A stretch of DNA of 64,000 bases from positions 124,001 through 188,000 of IMG/VR virus record IMGVR_UViG_3300009011_000002; one strand, written 5' to 3'. The translations under genes were made by a program, and so were the position numbers. Shown here one piece after another: positions 1,837-38,426 of the stretch (within the stretch, counting starts at the first letter, position 1; each line of letters opens with the position of its first letter). Under the pieces are notes generated by a model. That model was not told the origin of the DNA. It saw nothing but the letters and a program-made list of their open reading frames with translations, and ran no database searches.

Positions 1837-2433
1837 ATGGCCCTTCCAAATGAAAAACTCTTTTTGGATCGGTTTGTCCTTTACAACAATGAACGCTACA
1901 AGGATGAACCCCGAATCGTAAACGCGCTCAACGCCTTGACCGTTGGCAACGTTGTGTTCTCCAACTACCGTAAGGTTCCGCTCGAAGATGGTTCCAGTGA
2001 GATGACTCACTTGGTGGACCTCGACCAGCCAGGGATCTTGATTGCACACGACCAGCAATATCTCCCGGCAGACTATGTCGAGAACGGCGCTTCCCAGGTA
2101 GCGGAAGTGGATCCTTTGGCGTTGGAAGAACTCCAAACCCGTAAGTTCGATGGTATCTACCGTCTCCAAGAGAGCGTAGAGCCACCGGCTCACATCGGGG
2201 CGGTTCTGGTGCTGAAAGGGGAGAAGACAGCTGAGAACATTCGGCTGGTAGTGAAGGAGAACTGCTTCTTCATGCTGGACGACGAGGAGATTGTCATTGA
2301 CGACGAACTCACTCTCGTGACCATTGATTCCCACACCGTTGTGGGTGTCTTGCAGATCGTCGAAGGTATTTACGCTCGTGGTGAGCCGATCTACGACGGT
2401 ACCTACAACTACGACGGTACGATCACGTACTAA
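1837..2433 (+). CDS. putative virion/tail protein, paralog of 19941..20549
   Basis: 198 aa; C-terminal YDGTYNYDG repeats typical of tail proteins; directly upstream of the fibre gene. Confidence 0.65.
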   Translation: MALPNEKLFLDRFVLYNNERYKDEPRIVNALNALTVGNVVFSNYRKVPLEDGSSEMTHLVDLDQPGILIAHDQQYLPADYVENGASQVAEVDPLALEELQTRKFDGIYRLQESVEPPAHIGAVLVLKGEKTAENIRLVVKENCFFMLDDEEIVIDDELTLVTIDSHTVVGVLQIVEGIYARGEPIYDGTYNYDGTITY

Positions 2434-2459
2434 AACTCGCTTATCAAGGTAAAGAGATC

Positions 2460-5400
2460 ATGGCGAATATTGAAGAAGAAAGTGTCTTCCCCGAAGAAAT
2501 CCCGCTTATCGAGCGGGGTGAGAAAGTCGAAGGTGGTGTGGCTGGTGCTTCCAACCGCGCACTGATCCTGTTTGCCATGCGTACTCGCTGGCTGAAAGAC
2601 CAGCTGGAAGCCCTGGCTATCAACGGTCTGGACATGAAGGGTACTCTTCCCGATGAAGAAGCTCTGCTGGCCATCGATACCGAAGACCTTGCCCGCGGTA
2701 CCGCCTACGTCGTTGATTTCGCAATGCGCGTCTGGAACGGCACTGAATGGGCGAGCTCGGGTTCGCTGCGCGGTGCGCGTGGTCTGAACATCCTGGGTCG
2801 TTGGCCAACCAATAGCGATCTGCCTGTTGCGGAAGATCAAGAACTGGGTGACGCCTTCCTGTGGCGCAACGACGTTTGGGTGCTGACCCCCGATGGTTGG
2901 GAAGCTCTCAACATTCGTGGTGCTGACGGCAAAAGCGCTTTCGACGTCTGGTTGGAAATCCCAGGCAACGAAGGTAAGACCGAGGAAGAATTCGTCGAAG
3001 CCATCAAAGGCCCCGTCGGTGACTCCTTCCTGGATTCCTGGTTGGCACTTCCCGGTAACGAGGGTAAAGACCTCGATGACCTGATGGAAGCGCTGAAAGG
3101 TCCTCAGGGTGACGTGCGTCCTGCCTTCGCAGTGAAAGGCACCAAGCCAACCGCTGAAGATCTGCCACAACCTGGTGTTCAAGGCGACGCCTGGTACGTA
3201 GGCCTCGACCTGTACTTCTGGGTCGAAGAAGACGCCAGCTACTCGATGATCCCAGGTATCGGCGGTAAATCCGCCTTCGAGATCTGGAAAGAGAACGGCC
3301 ATCCAGACGGCACCATGGAAGAGTTCCTCGAATCCATGATGGGTGGCGAAGGCATCCTGATGAAGGGGCGTCTGGCTGACGAGGAAGCACTCGCAGCTAT
3401 CGATACCACCAACCTGAAACTGGGTACTTCCTACTTCGTCGATTTCGCGATGCGTGTATGGAACGGTACCGAGTGGAGTAGCTCGGGTTCCCTGCGTGGT
3501 GAGCGTGGTATCAACCTGCTGGGTAGCTGGCCAACTGGTAGCGACCTGCCGGTCCGTGACGACTACATCGTAGGTGACGCGTTCCTGTGGCGCAACGATA
3601 TCTGGATCCTCCTGCCTGAACCTGAGGGTTGGGAGTCCATGAACATCCGTGGTGCGGATGGTCGTTCGGCGTTGGAAGTATGGCAAGCCATCGAAGGCAA
3701 CGAGGGTAAAGACGAAGAAGACTTCTTCGAAGCCCTGCGTGGCCCTGCTGGTCTGTCGGCTTTCGCTGAGTGGCAGACCTTCCCGGGCAACAAGGACAAG
3801 CCGTACTCCGAGTTCCAAGAGACCATTCGTGGTCCTCAAGGTAACCCACGTGCTCCGTTCGAAGTAGCTGGTAGCGTTCCCAACGTTGGCGCTCTGCCAA
3901 CCCCTGGCGATGCAGCCAAAGCCTACTACATCGACCGTGACCTGCATGTGTGGGTGGAAGACACCCAGAGCTACTTCGTCATTCCTGGTCTGGCCGGTAA
4001 ATCGGCGTTTGAAGTATACACTTCGATCCCAGGTAACGAAGACAAGACCCTGGGCGAATTCTGGGAGTCGCTGCGTGGCCCTCAAGGTGAGAACGTCAAG
4101 GGCGATCCTGGTAAAGACGGTGCCAACCTGAACGTGCTGGGTCAAGTTGCAAATCGTGATGCACTGGACGATCTGCAAGACGTCAAAGACCAAGACGCCT
4201 ACAGCCTGGCTGACACCGGCCACCTGTGGATCTACTCCACTGAGAAAGGCGGGTGGGTTGACGCCGGTCCTTACCGTGGCGTGGATGGTAAATCCGCCTT
4301 CGAGATCTGGAAAGAACAGCCAGGTAACGAAGACGGTACTGTTGCTCAGTTCTTGGCTGCACTGAAAGGTAAAGACGGTACCAGCGTCAAGATCCTGGAT
4401 GTGTTCGACGAGCTGTCGGAACTTCCTACCGGTGCTGCTGAACAAGACACCTACGCTGTCCGTGAAACCCGGTCGATCTACACTTGGTTGAACGGTGCCT
4501 GGGCTAGCCTCGGTACGTTCGGTAAAGATGGTGCGGACGGTAAAGACGGTAAGTCGCTGGATATCATCAAAATCCTCACCGAGGACGACGATGCCATCCC
4601 AGCAGCTGACAATACCAGTCTCGGTAAGGCTTACGTCGACTTGGACAAAAACGTCTTCGTCAACATCGCCAACAGCTGGGTAAACGCCGGTAAGTTCACC
4701 GGTGAGCAAGGTGAGATCGGTCTGCCAGGTCATAACCTGCGCCCGAAAGGCACCATCGAATCGGTAAACCAACTGCCTAACCCTGCACTGGAAGGTGTGG
4801 AAGAAGGCGACGCCTACGTCATTGCCAGCACCAAGCTGATGTACGTGCTGGTGGACGGTCTGTGGAATGGTCCGTTCGACTTCATCGGCCCAGAAGGTAA
4901 GGACGGCCCTCAGGGTGCTCCTGGTGCGTTGATGCCTATTAAAGGTACCTTCGTATCCATGACTGCATTGCAGGCCGCACACCCTACTGGTGAGCTCGGT
5001 GACGCGTACATGCTCATCGACCCATCCGCTCAACCAGAACCACTGCGTAACCTGGCTATCTGGTCTCCAGAACAAGCCACGTGGGTCGACACCGGTCCTG
5101 CCGGTATCCGTGGTGAGAAAGGTGAACCTGGTAAGGATTCTACTGTACCGGGTGTCAAAGGTGACAAGGGCAGCCAGTGGCTGATTCTCGATGAAGTTGA
5201 TGAGCCGTCCAACACCTTCAACGGTCGCGTAGGCGACTGGTGTGTTACCCGTGGCATGAAGGTGTACTACAAGTCGCCTACCGGTTGGCAGTACTGGGGT
5301 ATGTTGATGGCGGGTGATGTCAACTCGCCGCTGCGTAGCCTGGGTAAGGTCGTGCGTTGGGGTACCGAGTGGGTCGCTCTCCCGGTTGATGAAGTTGAAG

Positions 5401-6050
5401 CACCAGAAGCTGGCATGTTCTACGCCCGTATTCTGAAAGAGGGTTCTCTGGATGAAACCGAGTGGGGCGTGGTCGAATTCCCGAAAGGGATCGAAGATCT
5501 ACTCACCGATGATGGCAAACAATACGTTCGCGTATTCGCTGCTGACGGGGAAACCCCAATCTGGGCAGAGCTCGATATCAGCGACCAGCTGGAAGGCTTC
5601 ATCAAAGACCCAGAAGGTGCTGCGGCTAACACCCTGTGGCTGCGTGCCGCCGGTGAGAAAACCTGGATCGAGTACAAGAAGGCGCCTACCACTACTGGCC
5701 TGCAGTTCCTCCAAATCGGCGGTGAGTGGAAGTCCTTCGACCGTTACGACTTGCTGATCAAAACGGCTAACGCCACTCTCACTATCAACCCTAGCGTCGA
5801 ACAATTCGTGAAACTGGATAACTCCGGTGCCACGGCCAAGGTCGTTAGCATCAACAACCACGGCGCCACTCGTGGCATGTGCGTGGTGTTGGAAGTGGTG
5901 GGTGTGGTTGGTGCGATCAGCTACGGCGGTACCAACATCAGGTGGGATCAGAACACCATCCCTAGCTTGACTGGTACCAAGAACCTCATCCTGTTCACCT
6001 GGGATGGCGATGTCTGGATCGGTTCCAAAGGTCCTGGTCTGCTCAACTAA
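2460..6050 (+). CDS. long collagen-like repeat tail (or head) fibre protein
   Basis: 1196 aa; N-terminal tail-fibre motif (IERGEKVEGG..SN..RTRWLK); G-X-Y triplets; repeated GKSAFEIW..GNEGK..EEF and GDAY...W...W...G modules. Confidence 0.85.
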   Translation: MANIEEESVFPEEIPLIERGEKVEGGVAGASNRALILFAMRTRWLKDQLEALAINGLDMKGTLPDEEALLAIDTEDLARGTAYVVDFAMRVWNGTEWASSGSLRGARGLNILGRWPTNSDLPVAEDQELGDAFLWRNDVWVLTPDGWEALNIRGADGKSAFDVWLEIPGNEGKTEEEFVEAIKGPVGDSFLDSWLALPGNEGKDLDDLMEALKGPQGDVRPAFAVKGTKPTAEDLPQPGVQGDAWYVGLDLYFWVEEDASYSMIPGIGGKSAFEIWKENGHPDGTMEEFLESMMGGEGILMKGRLADEEALAAIDTTNLKLGTSYFVDFAMRVWNGTEWSSSGSLRGERGINLLGSWPTGSDLPVRDDYIVGDAFLWRNDIWILLPEPEGWESMNIRGADGRSALEVWQAIEGNEGKDEEDFFEALRGPAGLSAFAEWQTFPGNKDKPYSEFQETIRGPQGNPRAPFEVAGSVPNVGALPTPGDAAKAYYIDRDLHVWVEDTQSYFVIPGLAGKSAFEVYTSIPGNEDKTLGEFWESLRGPQGENVKGDPGKDGANLNVLGQVANRDALDDLQDVKDQDAYSLADTGHLWIYSTEKGGWVDAGPYRGVDGKSAFEIWKEQPGNEDGTVAQFLAALKGKDGTSVKILDVFDELSELPTGAAEQDTYAVRETRSIYTWLNGAWASLGTFGKDGADGKDGKSLDIIKILTEDDDAIPAADNTSLGKAYVDLDKNVFVNIANSWVNAGKFTGEQGEIGLPGHNLRPKGTIESVNQLPNPALEGVEEGDAYVIASTKLMYVLVDGLWNGPFDFIGPEGKDGPQGAPGALMPIKGTFVSMTALQAAHPTGELGDAYMLIDPSAQPEPLRNLAIWSPEQATWVDTGPAGIRGEKGEPGKDSTVPGVKGDKGSQWLILDEVDEPSNTFNGRVGDWCVTRGMKVYYKSPTGWQYWGMLMAGDVNSPLRSLGKVVRWGTEWVALPVDEVEAPEAGMFYARILKEGSLDETEWGVVEFPKGIEDLLTDDGKQYVRVFAADGETPIWAELDISDQLEGFIKDPEGAAANTLWLRAAGEKTWIEYKKAPTTTGLQFLQIGGEWKSFDRYDLLIKTANATLTINPSVEQFVKLDNSGATAKVVSINNHGATRGMCVVLEVVGVVGAISYGGTNIRWDQNTIPSLTGTKNLILFTWDGDVWIGSKGPGLLN
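2634..3683 (+). repeat. internal ~105-aa duplication in the fibre gene (about 2634-2950 vs 3360-3683)
   Basis: MKG.L.DEEAL.AIDT...VDFAMRVWNGTEW.SSGSLRG...GDAFLWRND.W...IRGADG.SA occurs twice. Confidence 0.9.
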
Positions 6051-33650: not shown

Positions 33651-34265
33651 TTATACCGTCAGCGCATCGATTTCTTTACGCTGTTCTTCCAGTTCCGCAC
33701 CAAAAGCTTTGATGTACAAATCCGGATAACGAGCATAACCACCAGTGCCGAACTTTTCCTTCAGATGCTTGAGAGCACCTTCACGACGCTCAGCAAGGGT
33801 CATCTCAGGGTTGTGCTTTTCTCGGTACATCACAGCACGATAGCGCATCTGAGTAACCCGACCTGGCAACCCACGATCCGCCGAGTTGATCAGTTCAGCA
33901 AATCGATTACTGAACTCCCCCTTGAATGAAGCACGATGTTGCTGACAGCCCAGGTATACATTCCTGAGTTCTTCACCTTGAAGGTTGTTAACAATCAGCG
34001 GGTGGTCAGTGGTAACCAGCCACTCGTAGCTGAGGGTGTGGTGATTATTACGGCTCCACGCGAACATGTCGTGGAAGTAAGCGGCGAACAACATCCACTT
34101 AGGGTCGTAACCCAACCCTAGGCGTTGATCGATCACCATAGCGGTTTGGAACACTTCTTCGAAATGTTCTTTGCGATGAGCTTTGTCATTCAGTTCCCAA
34201 AGCTCAGAGAACGACTCGATAATTTGTTTACGCAGTTCGCCAATCTGTTCTGGGGTGGTCATCAT
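33651..34265 (-). CDS. HD-domain metal-dependent phosphohydrolase
   Basis: AH..EH..EV...AAYFHD...H...INSAD motif order. Confidence 0.85.
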   Translation of the reverse strand: MMTTPEQIGELRKQIIESFSELWELNDKAHRKEHFEEVFQTAMVIDQRLGLGYDPKWMLFAAYFHDMFAWSRNNHHTLSYEWLVTTDHPLIVNNLQGEELRNVYLGCQQHRASFKGEFSNRFAELINSADRGLPGRVTQMRYRAVMYREKHNPEMTLAERREGALKHLKEKFGTGGYARYPDLYIKAFGAELEEQRKEIDALTV

Positions 34266-34549
34266 GCGTTTCCTTCTTGTAAGAGTTTGAGTTTAGCCAA
34301 CCCGCATTTCTTTGCGATGTTGGTTGTTACGTTGTTGTGGATCCGATACCAGTGGACCCACCGCACACTGAGGAACTGACCGGTCTTCGAAAGCTTAGGC
34401 TCCGGCATAGCCTTGATCCGTTCGATATGTTGGAACCGAGCAGTTACAGGGGTACACCCATGTTTCTGTTGATACCACAGCTGCCACGCTGGATTGAACC
34501 CACCATTCCCATCAATGAGACTGGGTTCTTTTAATAGGACCTTCGGCAT
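34262..34549 (-). CDS. tandem two-WxxW-module protein
   Basis: EPSL..FNPAWQLWYQQKHGCTPVTA and EPKL..LSVRWVHWYRIHNNVTTNIA. Confidence 0.75.
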   Translation of the reverse strand: MPKVLLKEPSLIDGNGGFNPAWQLWYQQKHGCTPVTARFQHIERIKAMPEPKLSKTGQFLSVRWVHWYRIHNNVTTNIAKKCGLAKLKLLQEGNA

Positions 34550-34585
34550 AATAATCCCTGAATATGTTAGCTATCTAACACCTTA

Positions 34586-34615
34586 GTAATATAGATGGGA
34601 GATCGGCTAAAACTT
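34586..34615 (-). promoter_or_regulatory. early promoter
   Basis: CCATCTATATTAC 37 nt upstream of the 34549 ATG. Confidence 0.75.
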
Positions 34616-34654
34616 AATACCGATGTATCGGGTTAATAGGTCGTATCAAAAAGA

Positions 34655-34699
34655 AATATAACCCCCTACTGCCTTTGTGGGGCAGTAGGGGGTTATATT
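34655..34699 (-). terminator. intrinsic terminator
   Basis: 19-bp perfect stem followed by a U-rich tract on the minus strand. Confidence 0.85.
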
Positions 34700-34709
34700 C
34701 GGTTACTCG

Positions 34710-35117
34710 TTAGCCGAACAATACGGACAGGTCAGGTTTAACCAAGTTGAGTAGCGTTCTCAATTCTTGATTGGCCGGATTCATGACCATTTCGTAGTGA
34801 GGGTACTGAGGTGTCCACTGCCGAGTGTCTTTCAACGGTGGTGGTTTCAGCCCACAGAATTCATCGATGATGTGGTCTTCTTGCTCCAACATCATGTTGA
34901 ACCGGACGGAACTGAGTTGTTGGTGACGCATGAGTTCCCCAACGTTCCATTGGGTATTATGGGCCATTACATCCATCCCAAGGAAATCCATCCAGGCCCT
35001 TTCGTTGACACGACCGTCTACCTTACGCAGGGGTTTAGGTCGGACTACTGTTGGGCGAAGACCTTTACCACGACCAAAGGCAGCAATCAGATCGAGAGTA
35101 GAATTATTAGAACGCAT
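34710..35117 (-). CDS. hypothetical protein (possible degenerate WxxW module)
   Basis: PKPL..DGRVNERAWMDF. Confidence 0.6.
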   Translation of the reverse strand: MRSNNSTLDLIAAFGRGKGLRPTVVRPKPLRKVDGRVNERAWMDFLGMDVMAHNTQWNVGELMRHQQLSSVRFNMMLEQEDHIIDEFCGLKPPPLKDTRQWTPQYPHYEMVMNPANQELRTLLNLVKPDLSVLFG

Positions 35118-35604
35118 AACGGTTCACCTCGGCTGGTTCGGTAGGGAGCCACAACAGAACGGCACCGGCACCATGGTCATCGGGCAATGCTTCACGAACG
35201 GTAGCCCGCTGGTAATTGTCGAACAACCCTACCTCGCCGTTGAACTTCTGCTTGAACGGCAGTTCGAGTCCAACAGGTTTGGTATAACGGATAAAGCCCA
35301 GTACCCACTGCTCGGACTTACCGCCCCTTTCATAGTGACACACCACGATGAGCCCGTCACCGTACTCGTTGACCTCCAACTCGAAAGTCCGGGAGTTGAA
35401 GACCGTGTGGTTATGGAACATGATGAAAGCCAAGAAGGCTTCTTTCGTTGCCGGGACCAACACCTGCGGGAAACCGCTGTCGTTGAACATGTCACGCTGA
35501 ACGAACAGACAGTACTCGCCCGGGAAGGACTGGTCTTTACCACGAACCATATCCCAGTATTGTTCGGAAGTTTGGTTCTTGATGATGTCGATATAAGGAT
35601 GCAT
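35107..35604 (-). CDS. hypothetical protein
   Basis: 165 aa. Confidence 0.65.
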   Translation of the reverse strand: MHPYIDIIKNQTSEQYWDMVRGKDQSFPGEYCLFVQRDMFNDSGFPQVLVPATKEAFLAFIMFHNHTVFNSRTFELEVNEYGDGLIVVCHYERGGKSEQWVLGFIRYTKPVGLELPFKQKFNGEVGLFDNYQRATVREALPDDHGAGAVLLWLPTEPAEVNRYAF

Positions 35605-35619
35605 GTTCTGTACCTTTAG

Positions 35620-36210
35620 TTATTCAGATGGCCCGCTGTTGTCACTGCCGCTACTACCGCCGTAGTCGTTGTCAGACCCACGAGGAGAACACCGGGGCGC
35701 GCTCAGAGGCTCTCCGGTGCCTAAATCAGGGCCGTATTGGTGATGGTGGTGGATATGGGTGACGTTGCCGCCATGACGTTTAGGAGGAGCTGGCGGAGGC
35801 CCTTTTGGAGGGATCTTCGGTAGGGGGTTGCGACGGCCAGGTTCTAATGGTGGAGCTGAAGCTCGTGGATACCCGCCAGCTTTACGAGTCTTCTCACCCA
35901 ACGGTGGTTGACTGATGCTGTCAATCGTTAAAACGATATCATCAACACTATAGGCTTCGATGAAATCTTTTTCACTCTTACCTGCATTACCTTCGAGTGC
36001 TTGCCATACTTCAAATGCCGAACGACCCAGTCTTTTACTACGCTCGAGCTTACGGATTTCTTTCTCGGCATCACGGAACTTCTTTTCGAACTCGTTAGCC
36101 CGACGAGTCTCACGACACCACATAACGAACGAACTGATTACTGCGATCCAGAACAACAGGAACAGAATAACAGCCGGCAACATAGCGGCGGGGTTTAAGT
36201 GGAACGTCAT
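35620..36210 (-). CDS. membrane protein with coiled coil, one tail-fibre repeat and Pro/His-rich tail
   Basis: N-terminal TM; GRSAFEVWQALEGNAGKSEKDFIEA; start MTFHL after AGGAG. Confidence 0.7.
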   Translation of the reverse strand: MTFHLNPAAMLPAVILFLLFWIAVISSFVMWCRETRRANEFEKKFRDAEKEIRKLERSKRLGRSAFEVWQALEGNAGKSEKDFIEAYSVDDIVLTIDSISQPPLGEKTRKAGGYPRASAPPLEPGRRNPLPKIPPKGPPPAPPKRHGGNVTHIHHHHQYGPDLGTGEPLSAPRCSPRGSDNDYGGSSGSDNSGPSE

Positions 36211-36212
36211 CA

Positions 36213-36500
36213 CTAGCTCCTGTATTGAAGGTACAAGAGAGCCCACGCAACAATGTGGCCTCCCAATGCAATCGAAACCCCCAAGACCTGCCACCGATTC
36301 TGTAATGGCCAGTGGCGGCGCATCCGTTGCCAGCGTGTGGCATTCGGTTGTACCGGGGGACGGTTATCAAGCATCATCAGGATATTGAACGAGTCAGTTT
36401 TGAAGTGCTCGTCCACCATCCGTTTAGCTTCCTCGAGGTTGCCAGGAACCGGATGGCTTTCGATGTTAGGTTCGCGGAACTTGAGAATCTTGGCTGTCAT
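36213..36500 (-). CDS. small membrane protein
   Basis: C-terminal TM segment. Confidence 0.6.
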   Translation of the reverse strand: MTAKILKFREPNIESHPVPGNLEEAKRMVDEHFKTDSFNILMMLDNRPPVQPNATRWQRMRRHWPLQNRWQVLGVSIALGGHIVAWALLYLQYRS

Positions 36501-36702
36501 TTCGTTTACTCAGCTCTTCTTGTATCAGCCAATGGTGTTCTTCGGTAATCACCAACGTGGGTGGGCCAAAGCGGTAGTATTTGAACGTGAAGCCACCGGG
36601 GAGCATCTGGTTCATGCCCCTCAGTGCAGGGAGGTCGAGAGTCTCAACGCACCGTTTGATGCGTTGTTCTTCTCGAGTAAGAAAGCGAAGCACCTTGCTC
36701 AT
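36466..36702 (-). CDS. hypothetical protein
   Basis: start MSKVLRF coupled to the upstream stop. Confidence 0.5.
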   Translation of the reverse strand: MSKVLRFLTREEQRIKRCVETLDLPALRGMNQMLPGGFTFKYYRFGPPTLVITEEHHWLIQEELSKRNDSQDSQVPRT

Positions 36703-37091
36703 TACCGGATTCCTTGATCGTACTGAACTTGTTGCCTGTTCAATGCATAGGCCAGAGAGCACACCTCTTCTGGGGTCATGCCGTCCCGCCTAGCAATGTC
36801 CATCACCCAACGTTGAGACAACTGCCCGTTGGGTGTCCACATGGACGGTGGTTCGTCTGGCAGTTCGGCTGTCAAGAAGTGCAGCTCATTACGAAGGCCT
36901 TGTTTCAACATGTTGGCCATCATCAGAACTGTTTCTTTGTCTTCGGGGTGGACGCTTACCACACGTCCAGCCTTAGCCAACTTCTCGGACATCCAGTTGG
37001 TCCATTCGAATGCCACACGGTCTTTGTGGGAAGTAAAGACCGTGGGTTCATCTTCGCCTGCTTGGTAACCCTTGTAGCCTGGTGGAAACAT
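36702..37091 (-). CDS. WxxW-module protein (variant)
   Basis: EPPSM..GQLSQRWVMDIARRDGMTPEEV; AGGAGG RBS. Confidence 0.7.
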   Translation of the reverse strand: MFPPGYKGYQAGEDEPTVFTSHKDRVAFEWTNWMSEKLAKAGRVVSVHPEDKETVLMMANMLKQGLRNELHFLTAELPDEPPSMWTPNGQLSQRWVMDIARRDGMTPEEVCSLAYALNRQQVQYDQGIR

Positions 37092-37109
37092 AAATCCTCC
37101 TTTGTGCTA

Positions 37110-37295
37110 TTAAATGTCCTTCACGTCCTCCACCAACGTCAGGGTCAGCACAGGGGAGTAGGTGAGTTGTTCTTTGACAGGTGGTGGTAACTGGGCGATG
37201 AGTTCGGGGGTGAAGTGTAAACGGCCCAGCAAGGCAACGGGTATATCTTGGTCCAGTTCCTTGAGTCTAGCTAAAAGTTCTTTTTGACGATCCAT
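37110..37295 (-). CDS. hypothetical protein
   Basis: 61 aa, AGGAG RBS. Confidence 0.55.
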   Translation of the reverse strand: MDRQKELLARLKELDQDIPVALLGRLHFTPELIAQLPPPVKEQLTYSPVLTLTLVEDVKDI

Positions 37296-37312
37296 GAGGT
37301 ATATCTCCTAGG

Positions 37313-37798
37313 TCACATACCGAGTCGCTTAATGGCTTCTTGCAACAACTGGGTGTCAAAGGTCTTGCCAGCGATCTTGCCATCGCGTGTCAAGGAAGCC
37401 GCCAGGATCTCGAGGTGCTGGGAGATGTCCTTGTTGGTCATGTCGGATGGCGCTGGGATAAATGTCTTAGCCAGTGGGTTGTCCAGCATGGCCCGGAGTT
37501 TATCCAGTTCCTTGGTGGCCATCTTCATGCCTTCACTGAGAGCACCAATTGCTTGGATGCCTTTGAGCATGCCTTCGAAATTAGCGGCGAAGTTGCTTCT
37601 AAGGTCCGCAGGTTTGATGGAGTCGGCGTGGACTTTTTCGAGCTTACGCATCCCTGCCCCAAGACGCAGGCACATGTTCAGCTGTTCGATTGCAGCAGTG
37701 CGGTATTCCCGACTGGTACCGTCGGTCACAGGCAGTGCCAACACCATACGTTTCAGTGCACCCACTTGCCGTGCGTAATCATCGAGATCTTTGATCAT
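37313..37798 (-). CDS. hypothetical helical protein
   Basis: 161 aa, AGGAGG RBS. Confidence 0.65.
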   Translation of the reverse strand: MIKDLDDYARQVGALKRMVLALPVTDGTSREYRTAAIEQLNMCLRLGAGMRKLEKVHADSIKPADLRSNFAANFEGMLKGIQAIGALSEGMKMATKELDKLRAMLDNPLAKTFIPAPSDMTNKDISQHLEILAASLTRDGKIAGKTFDTQLLQEAIKRLGM

Positions 37799-38426
37799 CG
37801 GGTTCTACGCCTCCTTTTTCAATGAAGTCCTTGCCTATATGGATGGCAGCGACCAGTGAGATGTCATAGTGGTCACGCGCCCACTTAACCCACTCGTAGT
37901 TAAGGCCGCATTGCATGGAACCACTGAGTTTAGGTTCGCCGGGACGGCGGGCCAGATAAGTCCCTTTGGCATTCCAACGTTTGAGGAATGTGTGGATAGG
38001 AGAACCAGGGTTTTCCCTGATGCTGATTTCCAACGGAGTTTTATCGACAAGGCGACGACCGCTCTTGAAAATCCCCATCAAATCCAGACTGCCGTCTTCA
38101 AGGAAGAACTGACTGATGTCTTTGAAGTTGCCCCTGCCACTGACCGAATCAAAACTGGCTTCCGCATCTTCGATGCAGCTGAAGTACTGGCCGTTAGGAG
38201 GCAATTGGATCCAGCACTCTTGAGGAATGGCTTTGATCACATCCTCCGCCGACAGGTACTTAGGGATCCCACCAAACACCGTGCTGAAGGTACCAGGGCG
38301 AAGTCCGCCGTTCAGCAACTTATCCAACGTTGGAAAACCAACACTGAGTTTTTCCAGATGTTCCTTGGGGACCGGCTCAAATTCCGGCATTTTCAATTTG
38401 AGCCGATCAAACAAATCTTTATCCAT
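37779..38426 (-). CDS. RadA/DnaB-like N-terminal stub fused to a WxxW module
   Basis: LSVGFPTLDKLLNGGLRPG without Walker A; C-terminal EPKL..LNYEWVKWARDHYDISLVAA. Confidence 0.7.
   Translation of the reverse strand: MDKDLFDRLKLKMPEFEPVPKEHLEKLSVGFPTLDKLLNGGLRPGTFSTVFGGIPKYLSAEDVIKAIPQECWIQLPPNGQYFSCIEDAEASFDSVSGRGNFKDISQFFLEDGSLDLMGIFKSGRRLVDKTPLEISIRENPGSPIHTFLKRWNAKGTYLARRPGEPKLSGSMQCGLNYEWVKWARDHYDISLVAAIHIGKDFIEKGGVEPDDQRSR

What the first reader, a model, noticed from the sequence alone, without database searches (positions are those of the whole stretch)
35953..36027. One tail-fibre repeat transplanted into an early membrane protein 32 kb away
Seen: GRSAFEVWQALEGNAGKSEKDFIEA in 35620..36210 (minus strand) matches GRSALEVWQAIEGNEGKDEEDFFEA in the fibre gene (3660-3734, plus strand). 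By my count this is 19/25 aa and 60/75 nt identical, with six synonymous codon changes, suggesting selection on the peptide. It follows a TM helix and coiled coil and precedes a Pro/His-rich tail. Inference: a borrowed trimerisation module, a membrane anchor that nucleates fibre assembly, or a decoy of a virion epitope. The two copies also form a 75-bp inverted repeat.
Basis: partly seen in the sequence, partly recalled or inferred. Interest (0 to 1): 0.7.

Follow-up and report, generated by a model that had tools for sequence, protein, structure and literature searches.

The report
Tail-fibre repeat grafted into membrane protein
One 25-residue repeat unit of a jumbo phage's tail-fibre gene has been copied in frame into a small membrane protein 32 kb away. 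The copy is real and still intact, but the nearest sister phages lack it, so it is an optional add-on whose function is unproven.

Summary
Window 35953-36027 (-) and 3660-3734 (+) share 60/75 nt and 19/25 aa (blastn E 4e-13 against the 226.8-kb genome). This is the only coding patch shared between unrelated genes in that genome.

The unit belongs to a widespread, unnamed repeat of about 26 residues, found in collagen-like fibre proteins. Nucleotide identity, codon sharing and two rare residues (R2, E12) tie this copy to repeat 4 of this phage group's own fibre.

The recipient is a real 196-aa gene: an N-terminal membrane helix, a long charged helix, the module, then a disordered Pro/His-rich tail. 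An exhaustive search found one homologue cluster. All five variants in it (158 aa) carry an unrelated 57-nt linker where the window has a 99-nt cassette. One variant sits in a sister genome whose fibre is 89% identical.

The copy has not decayed. All seven replacements are family-compatible (simulation P about 1e-4), yet dN/dS on its own branch is inconclusive.

Gain versus loss, and selection versus recent arrival from an unsampled fibre allele, remain open. Predicted topology puts the module in the cytoplasm, which argues against a surface decoy. The function is untested. Interest is moderate.

The parts
35620..36210 (-). Recipient gene, 196 aa: a small single-pass membrane protein of unknown family
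   Evidence: ORF. AGGAG lies 6 nt before the ATG, and the upstream gene's stop lies 3 nt before it. Orthologues are conserved, with omega 0.08 in the N part and 0.41 in the C part. The only homologues are the P0002 cluster.
36217..36221 (-). Shine-Dalgarno-like AGGAG for the ATG at 36210
   Evidence: Read directly from the sequence.
36118..36180 (-). Predicted transmembrane helix (residues 11-31)
   Evidence: A 21-residue hydrophobic run. AF2 predicts a helix with pLDDT 94-96. Six K/R residues follow it and none precede it, so N-out/C-in is inferred.
36028..36117 (-). Charged juxtamembrane helix (residues 32-61)
   Evidence: AF2 predicts a continuous helix over residues 7-74, with pLDDT 72-87 here. 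Residues 32-57 are identical in the module-less orthologues P0002, P0128 and P0130; P0127 and P0129 differ only at K54N. Coiled-coil state was not tested.
35941..36039 (-). 99-nt allelic cassette: 12 nt, the 75-nt module, then 12 nt. Sister phages have an unrelated 57 nt here.
   Evidence: DNA alignment to L004. There is no residual similarity (local-alignment shuffle test P 0.21). L013 has the same 57 nt.
35953..36027 (-). The grafted fibre repeat (residues 62-86), the single copy in this protein
   Evidence: It scores 41.0 bits against the family profile (median of 836 real repeats 34.2; donor 38.4). phrog_26303 matches residues 62-86.
35833..35904 (-). Second window-only in-frame segment: 72 nt, residues 103-126, rich in Pro, Gly and Arg
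   Evidence: Absent from all five orthologues. No source was found in the genome. It is present in a second sample's contig.
35740..35757 (-). Conserved His cluster (HIHHHH) within the disordered Pro-rich tail
   Evidence: The tail has pLDDT of about 50.
34654..34700 (-). Terminator-like hairpin that ends the minus-strand unit (ORF, then a 165-aa gene, then a 135-aa gene)
   Evidence: 20-bp stem followed by a T run.
2460..6050 (+). Tail-fibre gene, 1196 aa, with seven copies of the repeat
   Evidence: phrog_3904 'tail fiber protein', E 1.6e-173. It is 30-33% identical over 81-88% of its length to the annotated tail fibre / virion structural proteins of phages 201phi2-1, EL and Psa21. Repeats start at aa 157, 187, 269, 401, 431, 513 and 610.
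3660..3734 (+). Fibre repeat 4 (aa 401-425), the present-day descendant of the donor
   Evidence: 60/75 nt to the copy. The other fibre repeats reach at most 48/75 to the copy and at most 50/75 to each other. In the AF2 model of fibre residues 385-520 it forms a helix-loop-helix with pLDDT 80-89.

Best explanation
SHOWN. The 75-nt tract is a descendant of repeat 4 of this phage group's own tail-fibre gene. It sits in frame in the linker between the juxtamembrane helix and the disordered tail of a small, lineage-restricted membrane protein. It is one of two alternative cassettes at that position: the window has 99 nt containing the module, and all known sister variants have an unrelated 57-nt Pro-rich linker. 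The module is therefore accessory to the protein's core role. The copy is still a full-quality member of the repeat family.

INFERRED. The tract arrived by illegitimate recombination, about when the window and sister lineages split or earlier. It has been kept foldable by selection. On the cytoplasmic face of the inner membrane it acts as a fibre-like helix-loop-helix contact surface, either for self-association of the membrane protein or for contact with the repeat region of fibre subunits. The stated confidence covers the origin and accessory-cassette parts. The selected contact-surface part alone rates about 0.35-0.4.
For: Real similarity.

Descent from repeat 4 of this group:
- nt identities out of 75 are: copy-window 60, copy-sister (L012) 60, copy-L006 50, window-sister 69, window-L006 54.
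- Foreign repeats with 18-19/25 aa reach only 51-53 nt and share codons at the chance level.
- Codon sharing with the donor is 12/18 against 7.6 expected.
- R2 and E12 occur only in this clade.

Cassette status:
- The non-homologous 99-nt versus 57-nt segment has sharp borders inside flanks that are about 95% identical.
- Five module-less variants exist, one in a 223.6-kb genome whose fibre is 89% identical in protein.

Intactness:
- The copy scores 41.0 bits against the family profile, above the median real repeat.
- Six of seven replacements go to the first or second commonest alternative residue.
- Random mutation would drop the profile score from 58.7 to 21 +/- 12; the observed score is 58.2 (4 of 50,000 simulations reach it).

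Real gene.

Fold: helix-loop-helix in both contexts.
Against: - dN/dS on the copy's own branch does not differ from neutrality (4 synonymous to 7 non-synonymous, P 0.23).
- The simulation assumes the donor was the inferred ancestor of the sampled fibres. An unsampled fibre allele already carrying these residues would explain the pattern with no selection in the new context.
- All sister variants do without the module.
- The single copy lacks the tandem and collagen-like context that every other family member has.
- The complex prediction gave no answer.
- AF2 confidence for the module within the ORF is low (pLDDT 54-63).
- No expression data could be found.
Confidence: 0.6

Rival explanations
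1. Neutral passenger. The tract entered recently from an unsampled, slightly diverged fibre allele of a co-infecting relative. It is tolerated because it sits in a flexible linker, and it does nothing.
For: - All five sister variants lack it.
- Branch dN/dS is inconclusive.
- The copy is equidistant (60/75) from the two sampled close fibres. A third allele as donor fits this as well as an old copy does.
- The surrounding protein is largely disordered.
- Only three fibre alleles of this group have been sampled.
Against: - No such allele was found in IMG/VR or JGI metagenomes with a pattern that matches both the copy and the donor.
- The tract's borders coincide with the module's borders and reading frame.
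- The allele, including its second insert, recurs at 98.7% identity in a soil sample of 2022.
Confidence: 0.3
2. Not a transplant from this fibre. The membrane protein independently carries a member of the widespread repeat family, either from an unrelated source or by ancient common ancestry.
For: At protein level the copy is as close to consensus-type repeats of unrelated fibres (P0055 19/25; phage RVTF4 18/25) as to the resident repeat. The family is large: 836 instances were collected.
Against: - Those foreign repeats reach only 51-53/75 nt, with chance-level codon sharing, against 60/75 and 12/18 for the resident lineage.
- The E12 and R2 states are clade-specific.
- No other single-copy or small-protein carrier was found.
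Confidence: 0.05
3. Surface decoy or superinfection-exclusion protein that displays a virion epitope outside the cell.
For: It is a small phage membrane protein carrying a piece of a virion protein.
Against: - There are six K/R residues just after the membrane helix and none before it, which predicts a cytoplasmic C-terminal part (inference).
- No signal-peptide features were seen.
- There is no similarity to any known exclusion protein in Pfam, PHROGs or NCBIfam.
- Sister phages with a near-identical fibre lack it.
Confidence: 0.03
4. The pair acts at DNA level, as an inverted repeat used for inversion or recombination.
For: It is an inverted 75-bp pair 32 kb apart.
Against: - It is only 80% identical, with a longest exact run of 14 nt.
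- An inversion would break both genes.
- The source sample's 160-kb contig spans the region in one arrangement. The only 'joint' reported is the similarity itself.
- The changes follow a codon pattern.
Confidence: 0.02

Closest known systems
The unnamed helix-loop-helix repeat of about 26 residues (consensus GKSAYEVWKELPGNEGKTEADFLASL; matched only by phrog_26303). It occurs in tail fibres of phiKZ-like jumbo phages (201phi2-1, EL, Psa21, RVTF4) and in bacterial collagen-like proteins.
   Same: The copy matches the family profile end to end (41 bits) and keeps all hallmark residues: G1, S3, A4, aromatic 5, E6, W8, G13, N14, G16, K17 and F22. It has the same predicted helix-loop-helix.
   Different: Every other carrier found has 2-20 copies and is a fibre or a collagen-like repeat protein; most also carry runs of Gly-X-Y triplets. 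Here there is a single copy with no Gly-X-Y flanks, behind a membrane helix in a 196-aa protein.
Mosaic exchange of short segments among phage tail-fibre genes (for example T-even gp37/gp38, lambda/P2/Mu fibre cassettes; cited from general knowledge, not tested here).
   Same: A short tract of fibre-gene sequence has moved, with sharp borders, and exists as alternative cassettes among close relatives.
   Different: The recipient is not a fibre gene. It is an unrelated membrane-protein gene on the opposite strand of the same genome, and there is no flanking homology that could have guided the exchange.
Small autonomous oligomerisation units of phage fibres, such as the 27-residue T4 fibritin foldon (general knowledge).
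   Same: Similar size and a fibre origin. It is the kind of role the graft could play if it is functional.
   Different: No sequence or detectable fold similarity. Oligomerisation of this module has not been shown. The prediction was uninformative.
Phage membrane proteins of superinfection exclusion (T4 Imm/Sp, P22 SieA, T5 Llp; general knowledge; SieA in PMC10883804).
   Same: Small, accessory, phage-encoded membrane proteins that vary between close relatives.
   Different: No sequence similarity. None is known to carry a virion-derived module. The module here is predicted to be cytoplasmic.

Membership tests
Fibre helix-loop-helix repeat (phrog_26303 type) | Full-length match to the family profile with the hallmark residues | tested here: met
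   41.0 bits, i-E 4e-11 in the six-frame genome. The median of 836 real repeats is 34.2. phrog_26303 gives E 0.002 on residues 62-86.
Fibre helix-loop-helix repeat (phrog_26303 type) | Occurs as two or more copies per protein | tested here: not met
   There is one copy in the ORF. All 52 module-only hits have at least two matched stretches; apart from P0103, which matches the Pro-rich tail, these are copies of the repeat.
Fibre helix-loop-helix repeat (phrog_26303 type) | Embedded in collagen-like Gly-X-Y or fibre sequence and followed by L-K/R-G | tested here: not met
   The flanks are KLERSKRL and YSVDDIV. Similarity to the fibre ends exactly at the 75-nt borders.
Fibre helix-loop-helix repeat (phrog_26303 type) | Short helix, loop (xPGNxGK), helix | tested here: inconclusive
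   In the fibre fragment it forms helices with pLDDT 80-89. In the ORF the same pattern appears, but with pLDDT 54-63 from a single sequence.
Tail fibre protein (phrog_3904), applied to the donor gene 2460-6050 | Profile match and homology to annotated virion fibre proteins | tested here: met
   E 1.6e-173. tblastn matches the 201phi2-1, EL and Psa21 tail fibre / virion structural proteins.
Tail-fibre assembly or chaperone proteins | Sequence membership in a known Tfa, gp38 or gp57-type family | tested here: not met
   There are no Pfam, PHROG or NCBIfam hits for the ORF beyond the module.
Superinfection-exclusion membrane proteins | Similarity to a known family, and exposure of the active part outside the cytoplasm | tested here: not met
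   No family hit. The positive-inside rule predicts a cytoplasmic C-terminal part; this is an inference that has not been tested experimentally.
Chimalliviridae-like jumbo phage (genome context) | Homology of core proteins to phiKZ/EL-group phages | tested here: met
   The 826-aa protein is 49% identical to phage EL and 45% to Erwinia phages RisingSun and Joad over its full length. The fibre homologues come from the same group.

The most novel reading that the evidence does not exclude
The membrane-anchored single repeat is a working mimic of the fibre. On the cytoplasmic face of the inner membrane it docks onto, or co-folds with, the repeat region of fibre subunits. It would either tether the phage's own fibres for assembly, or act as a dominant-negative unit that spoils fibre trimerisation of co-infecting sister phages. 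The second role would be a form of competition between phages that uses a piece of the target protein itself.
Probability: 0.12. Interest if true: 0.75.

Novelty: new variant of a known kind. Interest (0 to 1): 0.4.

Why it matters
Phage genomes are known to be mosaics, and fibre genes swap segments with one another. Clear, datable cases are rare in which one structural repeat unit has been lifted out of a virion gene and set into an unrelated non-structural protein of the same genome.

This case comes with a natural control: sister phages have a near-identical fibre and a module-less allele. That makes a clean experiment possible on whether a 25-residue fibre unit can carry a function, such as self-association or fibre binding, into a new protein.

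If the module proves to be a passenger, the case still documents how small a unit of domain shuffling in phages can be. It also draws attention to a large repeat family that no curated library names.

Tried and rejected
- Relatives of the ORF. IMG/VR found none. The phage collection by DNA and by protein gave only a module-level hit in RVTF4. The word-indexed search and the exhaustive search found only the P0002 cluster. A search limited to the module region among small proteins found only the protein itself.
- Donor search by DNA pattern. There were no hits in IMG/VR. JGI metagenomes returned only the window's own genome and one chance hit in an unrelated ORF.
- The 242-kb relative that shares the fibre (L006/L007) has no counterpart of the ORF or its neighbours in the 20-kb stretch examined next to its Kelch gene, the position they occupy in L004 and L013, so it could not polarise gain against loss.
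- I tested whether the sister linker is a decayed or frameshifted remnant of the module. It has no significant similarity.
- Junction microhomology between the fibre, the ORF and the sister allele was checked by eye. Nothing convincing was seen.
- Structure and function leads. There are no PDB sequence matches other than His-tag artefacts. Foldseek against PDB found nothing at E<0.8. The ESM Atlas gave only sub-threshold leads. Pfam's weak MAP17 hit (E 0.011, below cut-off) reflects the membrane helix and was rejected. NCBIfam found nothing.
- The heterotrimer prediction (two copies of fibre residues 392-465 plus ORF residues 33-100) returned 'no answer' and counts neither for nor against.
- No RNA runs were listed, so 'early' expression stays untested.
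- Three literature searches found nothing on this repeat or on a comparable graft.

Full report
**1. The observation**

The ungapped comparison is 60/75 nt and 19/25 aa. Six codons differ synonymously and six non-synonymously. Similarity begins at the first G codon and ends at the last A codon; the flanks do not align.

Against the whole 226,773-bp genome the tract scores E 4e-13, and the gene has no other notable match. A genome self-comparison finds only five non-self pairs at E<1e-6. This is the only one that links two unrelated genes.

As an inverted repeat it is imperfect, with a longest exact run of 14 nt.

**2. Genome and donor gene**

The window is bases 124001-188000 of an IMG/VR virus record with direct terminal repeats. 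The record was assembled from a rhizosphere metagenome. A large conserved protein is 49% identical to Pseudomonas phage EL and 45% to Erwinia phages RisingSun and Joad. The phage is therefore a phiKZ/EL-like jumbo phage.

The gene at 2460-6050 matches phrog_3904 'tail fiber protein' at E 1.6e-173. It also matches the annotated tail fibre / virion structural proteins of 201phi2-1, EL and Psa21. It holds seven copies of the repeat, starting at aa 157, 187, 269, 401, 431, 513 and 610, and contains a large internal duplication.

**3. The repeat family**

An exhaustive profile-free search of 1.84 billion representatives with the ORF returned one full-length relative and 52 proteins that match only part of the ORF. 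In 51 of them the match is residues about 61-87; P0103 matches the Pro-rich tail instead. All have at least two matched stretches. By motif count the module-matching hits carry up to 20 copies. Most also contain Gly-X-Y runs, and several are annotated as collagen-like.

A profile built from 836 instances has the consensus GKSAYEVWKELPGNEGKTEADFLASL. Pfam and NCBIfam have no model for it; only phrog_26303 touches it. No solved structure matches by sequence or by fold. In an AF2 model of fibre residues 385-520 the unit is a short helix, a loop and a helix, with pLDDT 80-89.

In this genome the profile finds the seven fibre copies and the ORF copy, and nothing else.

**4. The recipient gene**

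The gene has an AGGAG 6 nt upstream of its ATG, and it starts 3 nt after the upstream gene's stop. It lies in a run of tightly packed minus-strand genes that ends at a strong hairpin terminator at 34654-34700.

AF2 from a single sequence predicts one long helix over residues 7-74, very confident across the hydrophobic stretch. It then predicts a loop, a helix at 80-86, and disorder beyond. Six Lys/Arg residues follow the hydrophobic helix and none precede it. By the positive-inside rule the module and tail should therefore face the cytoplasm; this is an inference.

The neighbouring genes have no family assignment. Whether the gene is 'early' could not be tested, because no RNA run was listed.

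**5. Relatives lack the segment**

The only homologues in 5.8 billion clustered proteins and 1.84 billion representatives are one cluster of five variants. All five are 158 aa.

In DNA, the flanks inside the gene are about 95% identical. The window's 99 nt (12 nt, the 75-nt module, 12 nt) face an unrelated 57 nt that encodes a Pro-rich linker. There is no residual similarity between the two. A second 72-nt in-frame segment is also found only in the window.

One module-less variant lies on a 223,566-bp contig that also carries a 1196-aa fibre. That fibre is 89% identical in protein and 87% in DNA to the window's fibre. A 151-nt contig from a 2022 soil sample matches the window allele with two differences. 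It covers the second insert and the last 23 nt of the module.

**6. Where the copy came from**

At protein level the copy is as close to consensus-type repeats of unrelated fibres (P0055 19/25; RVTF4 18/25) as to the resident repeat 4. DNA separates them:

| Comparison with the copy | nt identity (of 75) | Shared codons at identical residues |
|---|---|---|
| Foreign repeats (P0055, RVTF4) | 51-53 | 7-8 of 17-18, about chance |
| Repeat 4 of the window fibre | 60 | 12 of 18 (7.6 expected, P 0.024) |
| Repeat 4 of the sister fibre (L012) | 60 | 12 of 17 |

Among orthologous repeats, only this clade has E in place of the usual P at position 12. Only the window and sister fibres have R at position 2. 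The copy has both.

The remaining pairwise identities out of 75 are: window-sister 69, copy-L006 50, window-L006 54. The copy therefore left the repeat-4 lineage after the split from the 242-kb relative's fibre. It probably left at or before the split of the window and sister fibres. Three sites support that order, against one each for the two alternatives, so the evidence is weak.

**7. Timing and polarity**

Synonymous divergence between copy and donor is 8 of 15.2 sites. This is higher than in the ORF's own flanks between the two phages (18 of 87.6; P 0.005-0.02). It is not distinguishable from the fibre as a whole (0.37) or from the neighbouring genes (0.31-0.74).

The event is therefore roughly as old as, or older than, the split between the two phage lineages. 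It cannot be decided whether the window lineage gained the module or the sister clade replaced it. The ORF's flanks are the least diverged of the nine genes compared, while its centre is non-homologous. That is the pattern expected of alternative cassettes shuffled between conserved flanks.

**8. Is the peptide under selection?**

- Copy against donor gives omega 0.14 (Fisher P 0.0012), but that path includes the fibre, which is constrained anyway.
- With an ancestor inferred from three fibres, the copy's own branch has 4 synonymous and 7 non-synonymous changes (omega 0.42, P 0.23). The count of replacements therefore shows nothing.
- The kind of replacement does show something. Six of the seven go to the commonest or second commonest alternative residue in the family profile. 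The profile score stays at 58.2, against 58.7 for the ancestor.
- With 11 random nucleotide changes the score falls to 21 +/- 12. Only 4 of 50,000 simulations reach the observed value, and none of 13,676 that have exactly seven replacements.

Either the module has been kept foldable in its new home, or the differences arose in an unsampled fibre allele that was the true donor. Pattern scans of IMG/VR and JGI metagenomes found no such allele, but only three close fibre alleles have been sampled.

**9. Function**

Nothing was shown. A prediction of two fibre fragments with the ORF's soluble part returned 'no answer'. The predicted topology argues against any role outside the cell. The absence from sister phages shows that the module is not needed for the protein's core role.

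My best reading has two parts. The first is an accessory cassette derived from the fibre, for which I put confidence at about 0.6. The second is that the cassette has probably been retained as a small fibre-like contact surface in the cytoplasm, at about 0.35-0.4. The main rival is a neutral passenger, at about 0.3.

**10. Comparison with what is known, and verdict**

The unit is a member of a large but uncurated repeat family by sequence. It fails the family's contextual features: it is a single copy, has no collagen-like flanks, and is not in a fibre.

The event resembles the well-known mosaic exchange among fibre genes, but here the recipient is not a fibre gene. I found no similarity to fibre chaperones or exclusion proteins.

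I rate it a new variant of a known kind, of moderate interest. It offers a clean natural experiment in very small-scale domain shuffling, with a built-in control in the sister phages. There is not yet evidence that it does anything.

Noticed in passing
window 35833-35904 (-): A second in-frame segment is found only in the window allele: 72 nt encoding residues 103-126, rich in Pro, Gly and Arg. It is absent from all five orthologues, and no source was found in the genome. It is present in a second sample's contig.
   Followed up: partly
window 34550-34709; L004 11457-12368; L013 4455-5366; L007 10456-11367: Sister phages carry a 303-aa Kelch-repeat gene on the opposite strand where the window has only an intergenic hairpin terminator (34654-34700). 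The window's genome has a 40%-identical Kelch gene at genome 119914-120822, just left of the window.
   Followed up: partly
window 2460-6050 (+): The fibre contains a large internal tandem duplication: aa 69-303 against 311-548 at 55% identity, and nt 2634-3002 against 3360-3734 at 70%. Its N-terminus is about 21 residues shorter than that of the 242-kb relative and differs from it.
   Followed up: partly
window 2430-5075 (-): An 881-aa open frame runs antisense to the fibre gene. It has no support as a gene and is presumed to be a by-product of the fibre's codon and repeat composition.
   Followed up: no
genome 121960-122032 and 209094-209167 (outside the window); genome 12082-12133 and 204938-204989: These are the only other short dispersed repeats in the genome. 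One is a 74-bp direct pair (80% identical) that looks intergenic. The other is a 52-bp inverted pair (87% identical) that contains a hairpin. They may be regulatory elements.
   Followed up: no
window 35620-36210 versus neighbouring genes 34262-38426: The ORF's conserved flanks have the lowest synonymous divergence from the sister phages (pS 0.17-0.23) of the nine genes compared (the others are 0.31-0.74), although its centre is non-homologous. This suggests recent recombination across this gene.
   Followed up: partly
L006/L007 (ENA ERZ15186071 NODE_9, 242 kb): This relative shares the fibre module at 82% nt identity. In the 20-kb stretch examined next to its Kelch gene, the position these genes occupy in L004 and L013, it has nothing similar to the block of small minus-strand genes around the ORF. 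The group's genomes are mosaic at the scale of gene blocks.
   Followed up: partly
window 2460-6050 homologue in Pseudomonas phage RVTF4 (PQ015378.1, 216934-221025): The RVTF4 fibre homologue is annotated as 'N-acetylmuramoyl-L-alanine amidase'. This looks like an annotation carried over from the neighbouring gene rather than a property of the protein.
   Followed up: no
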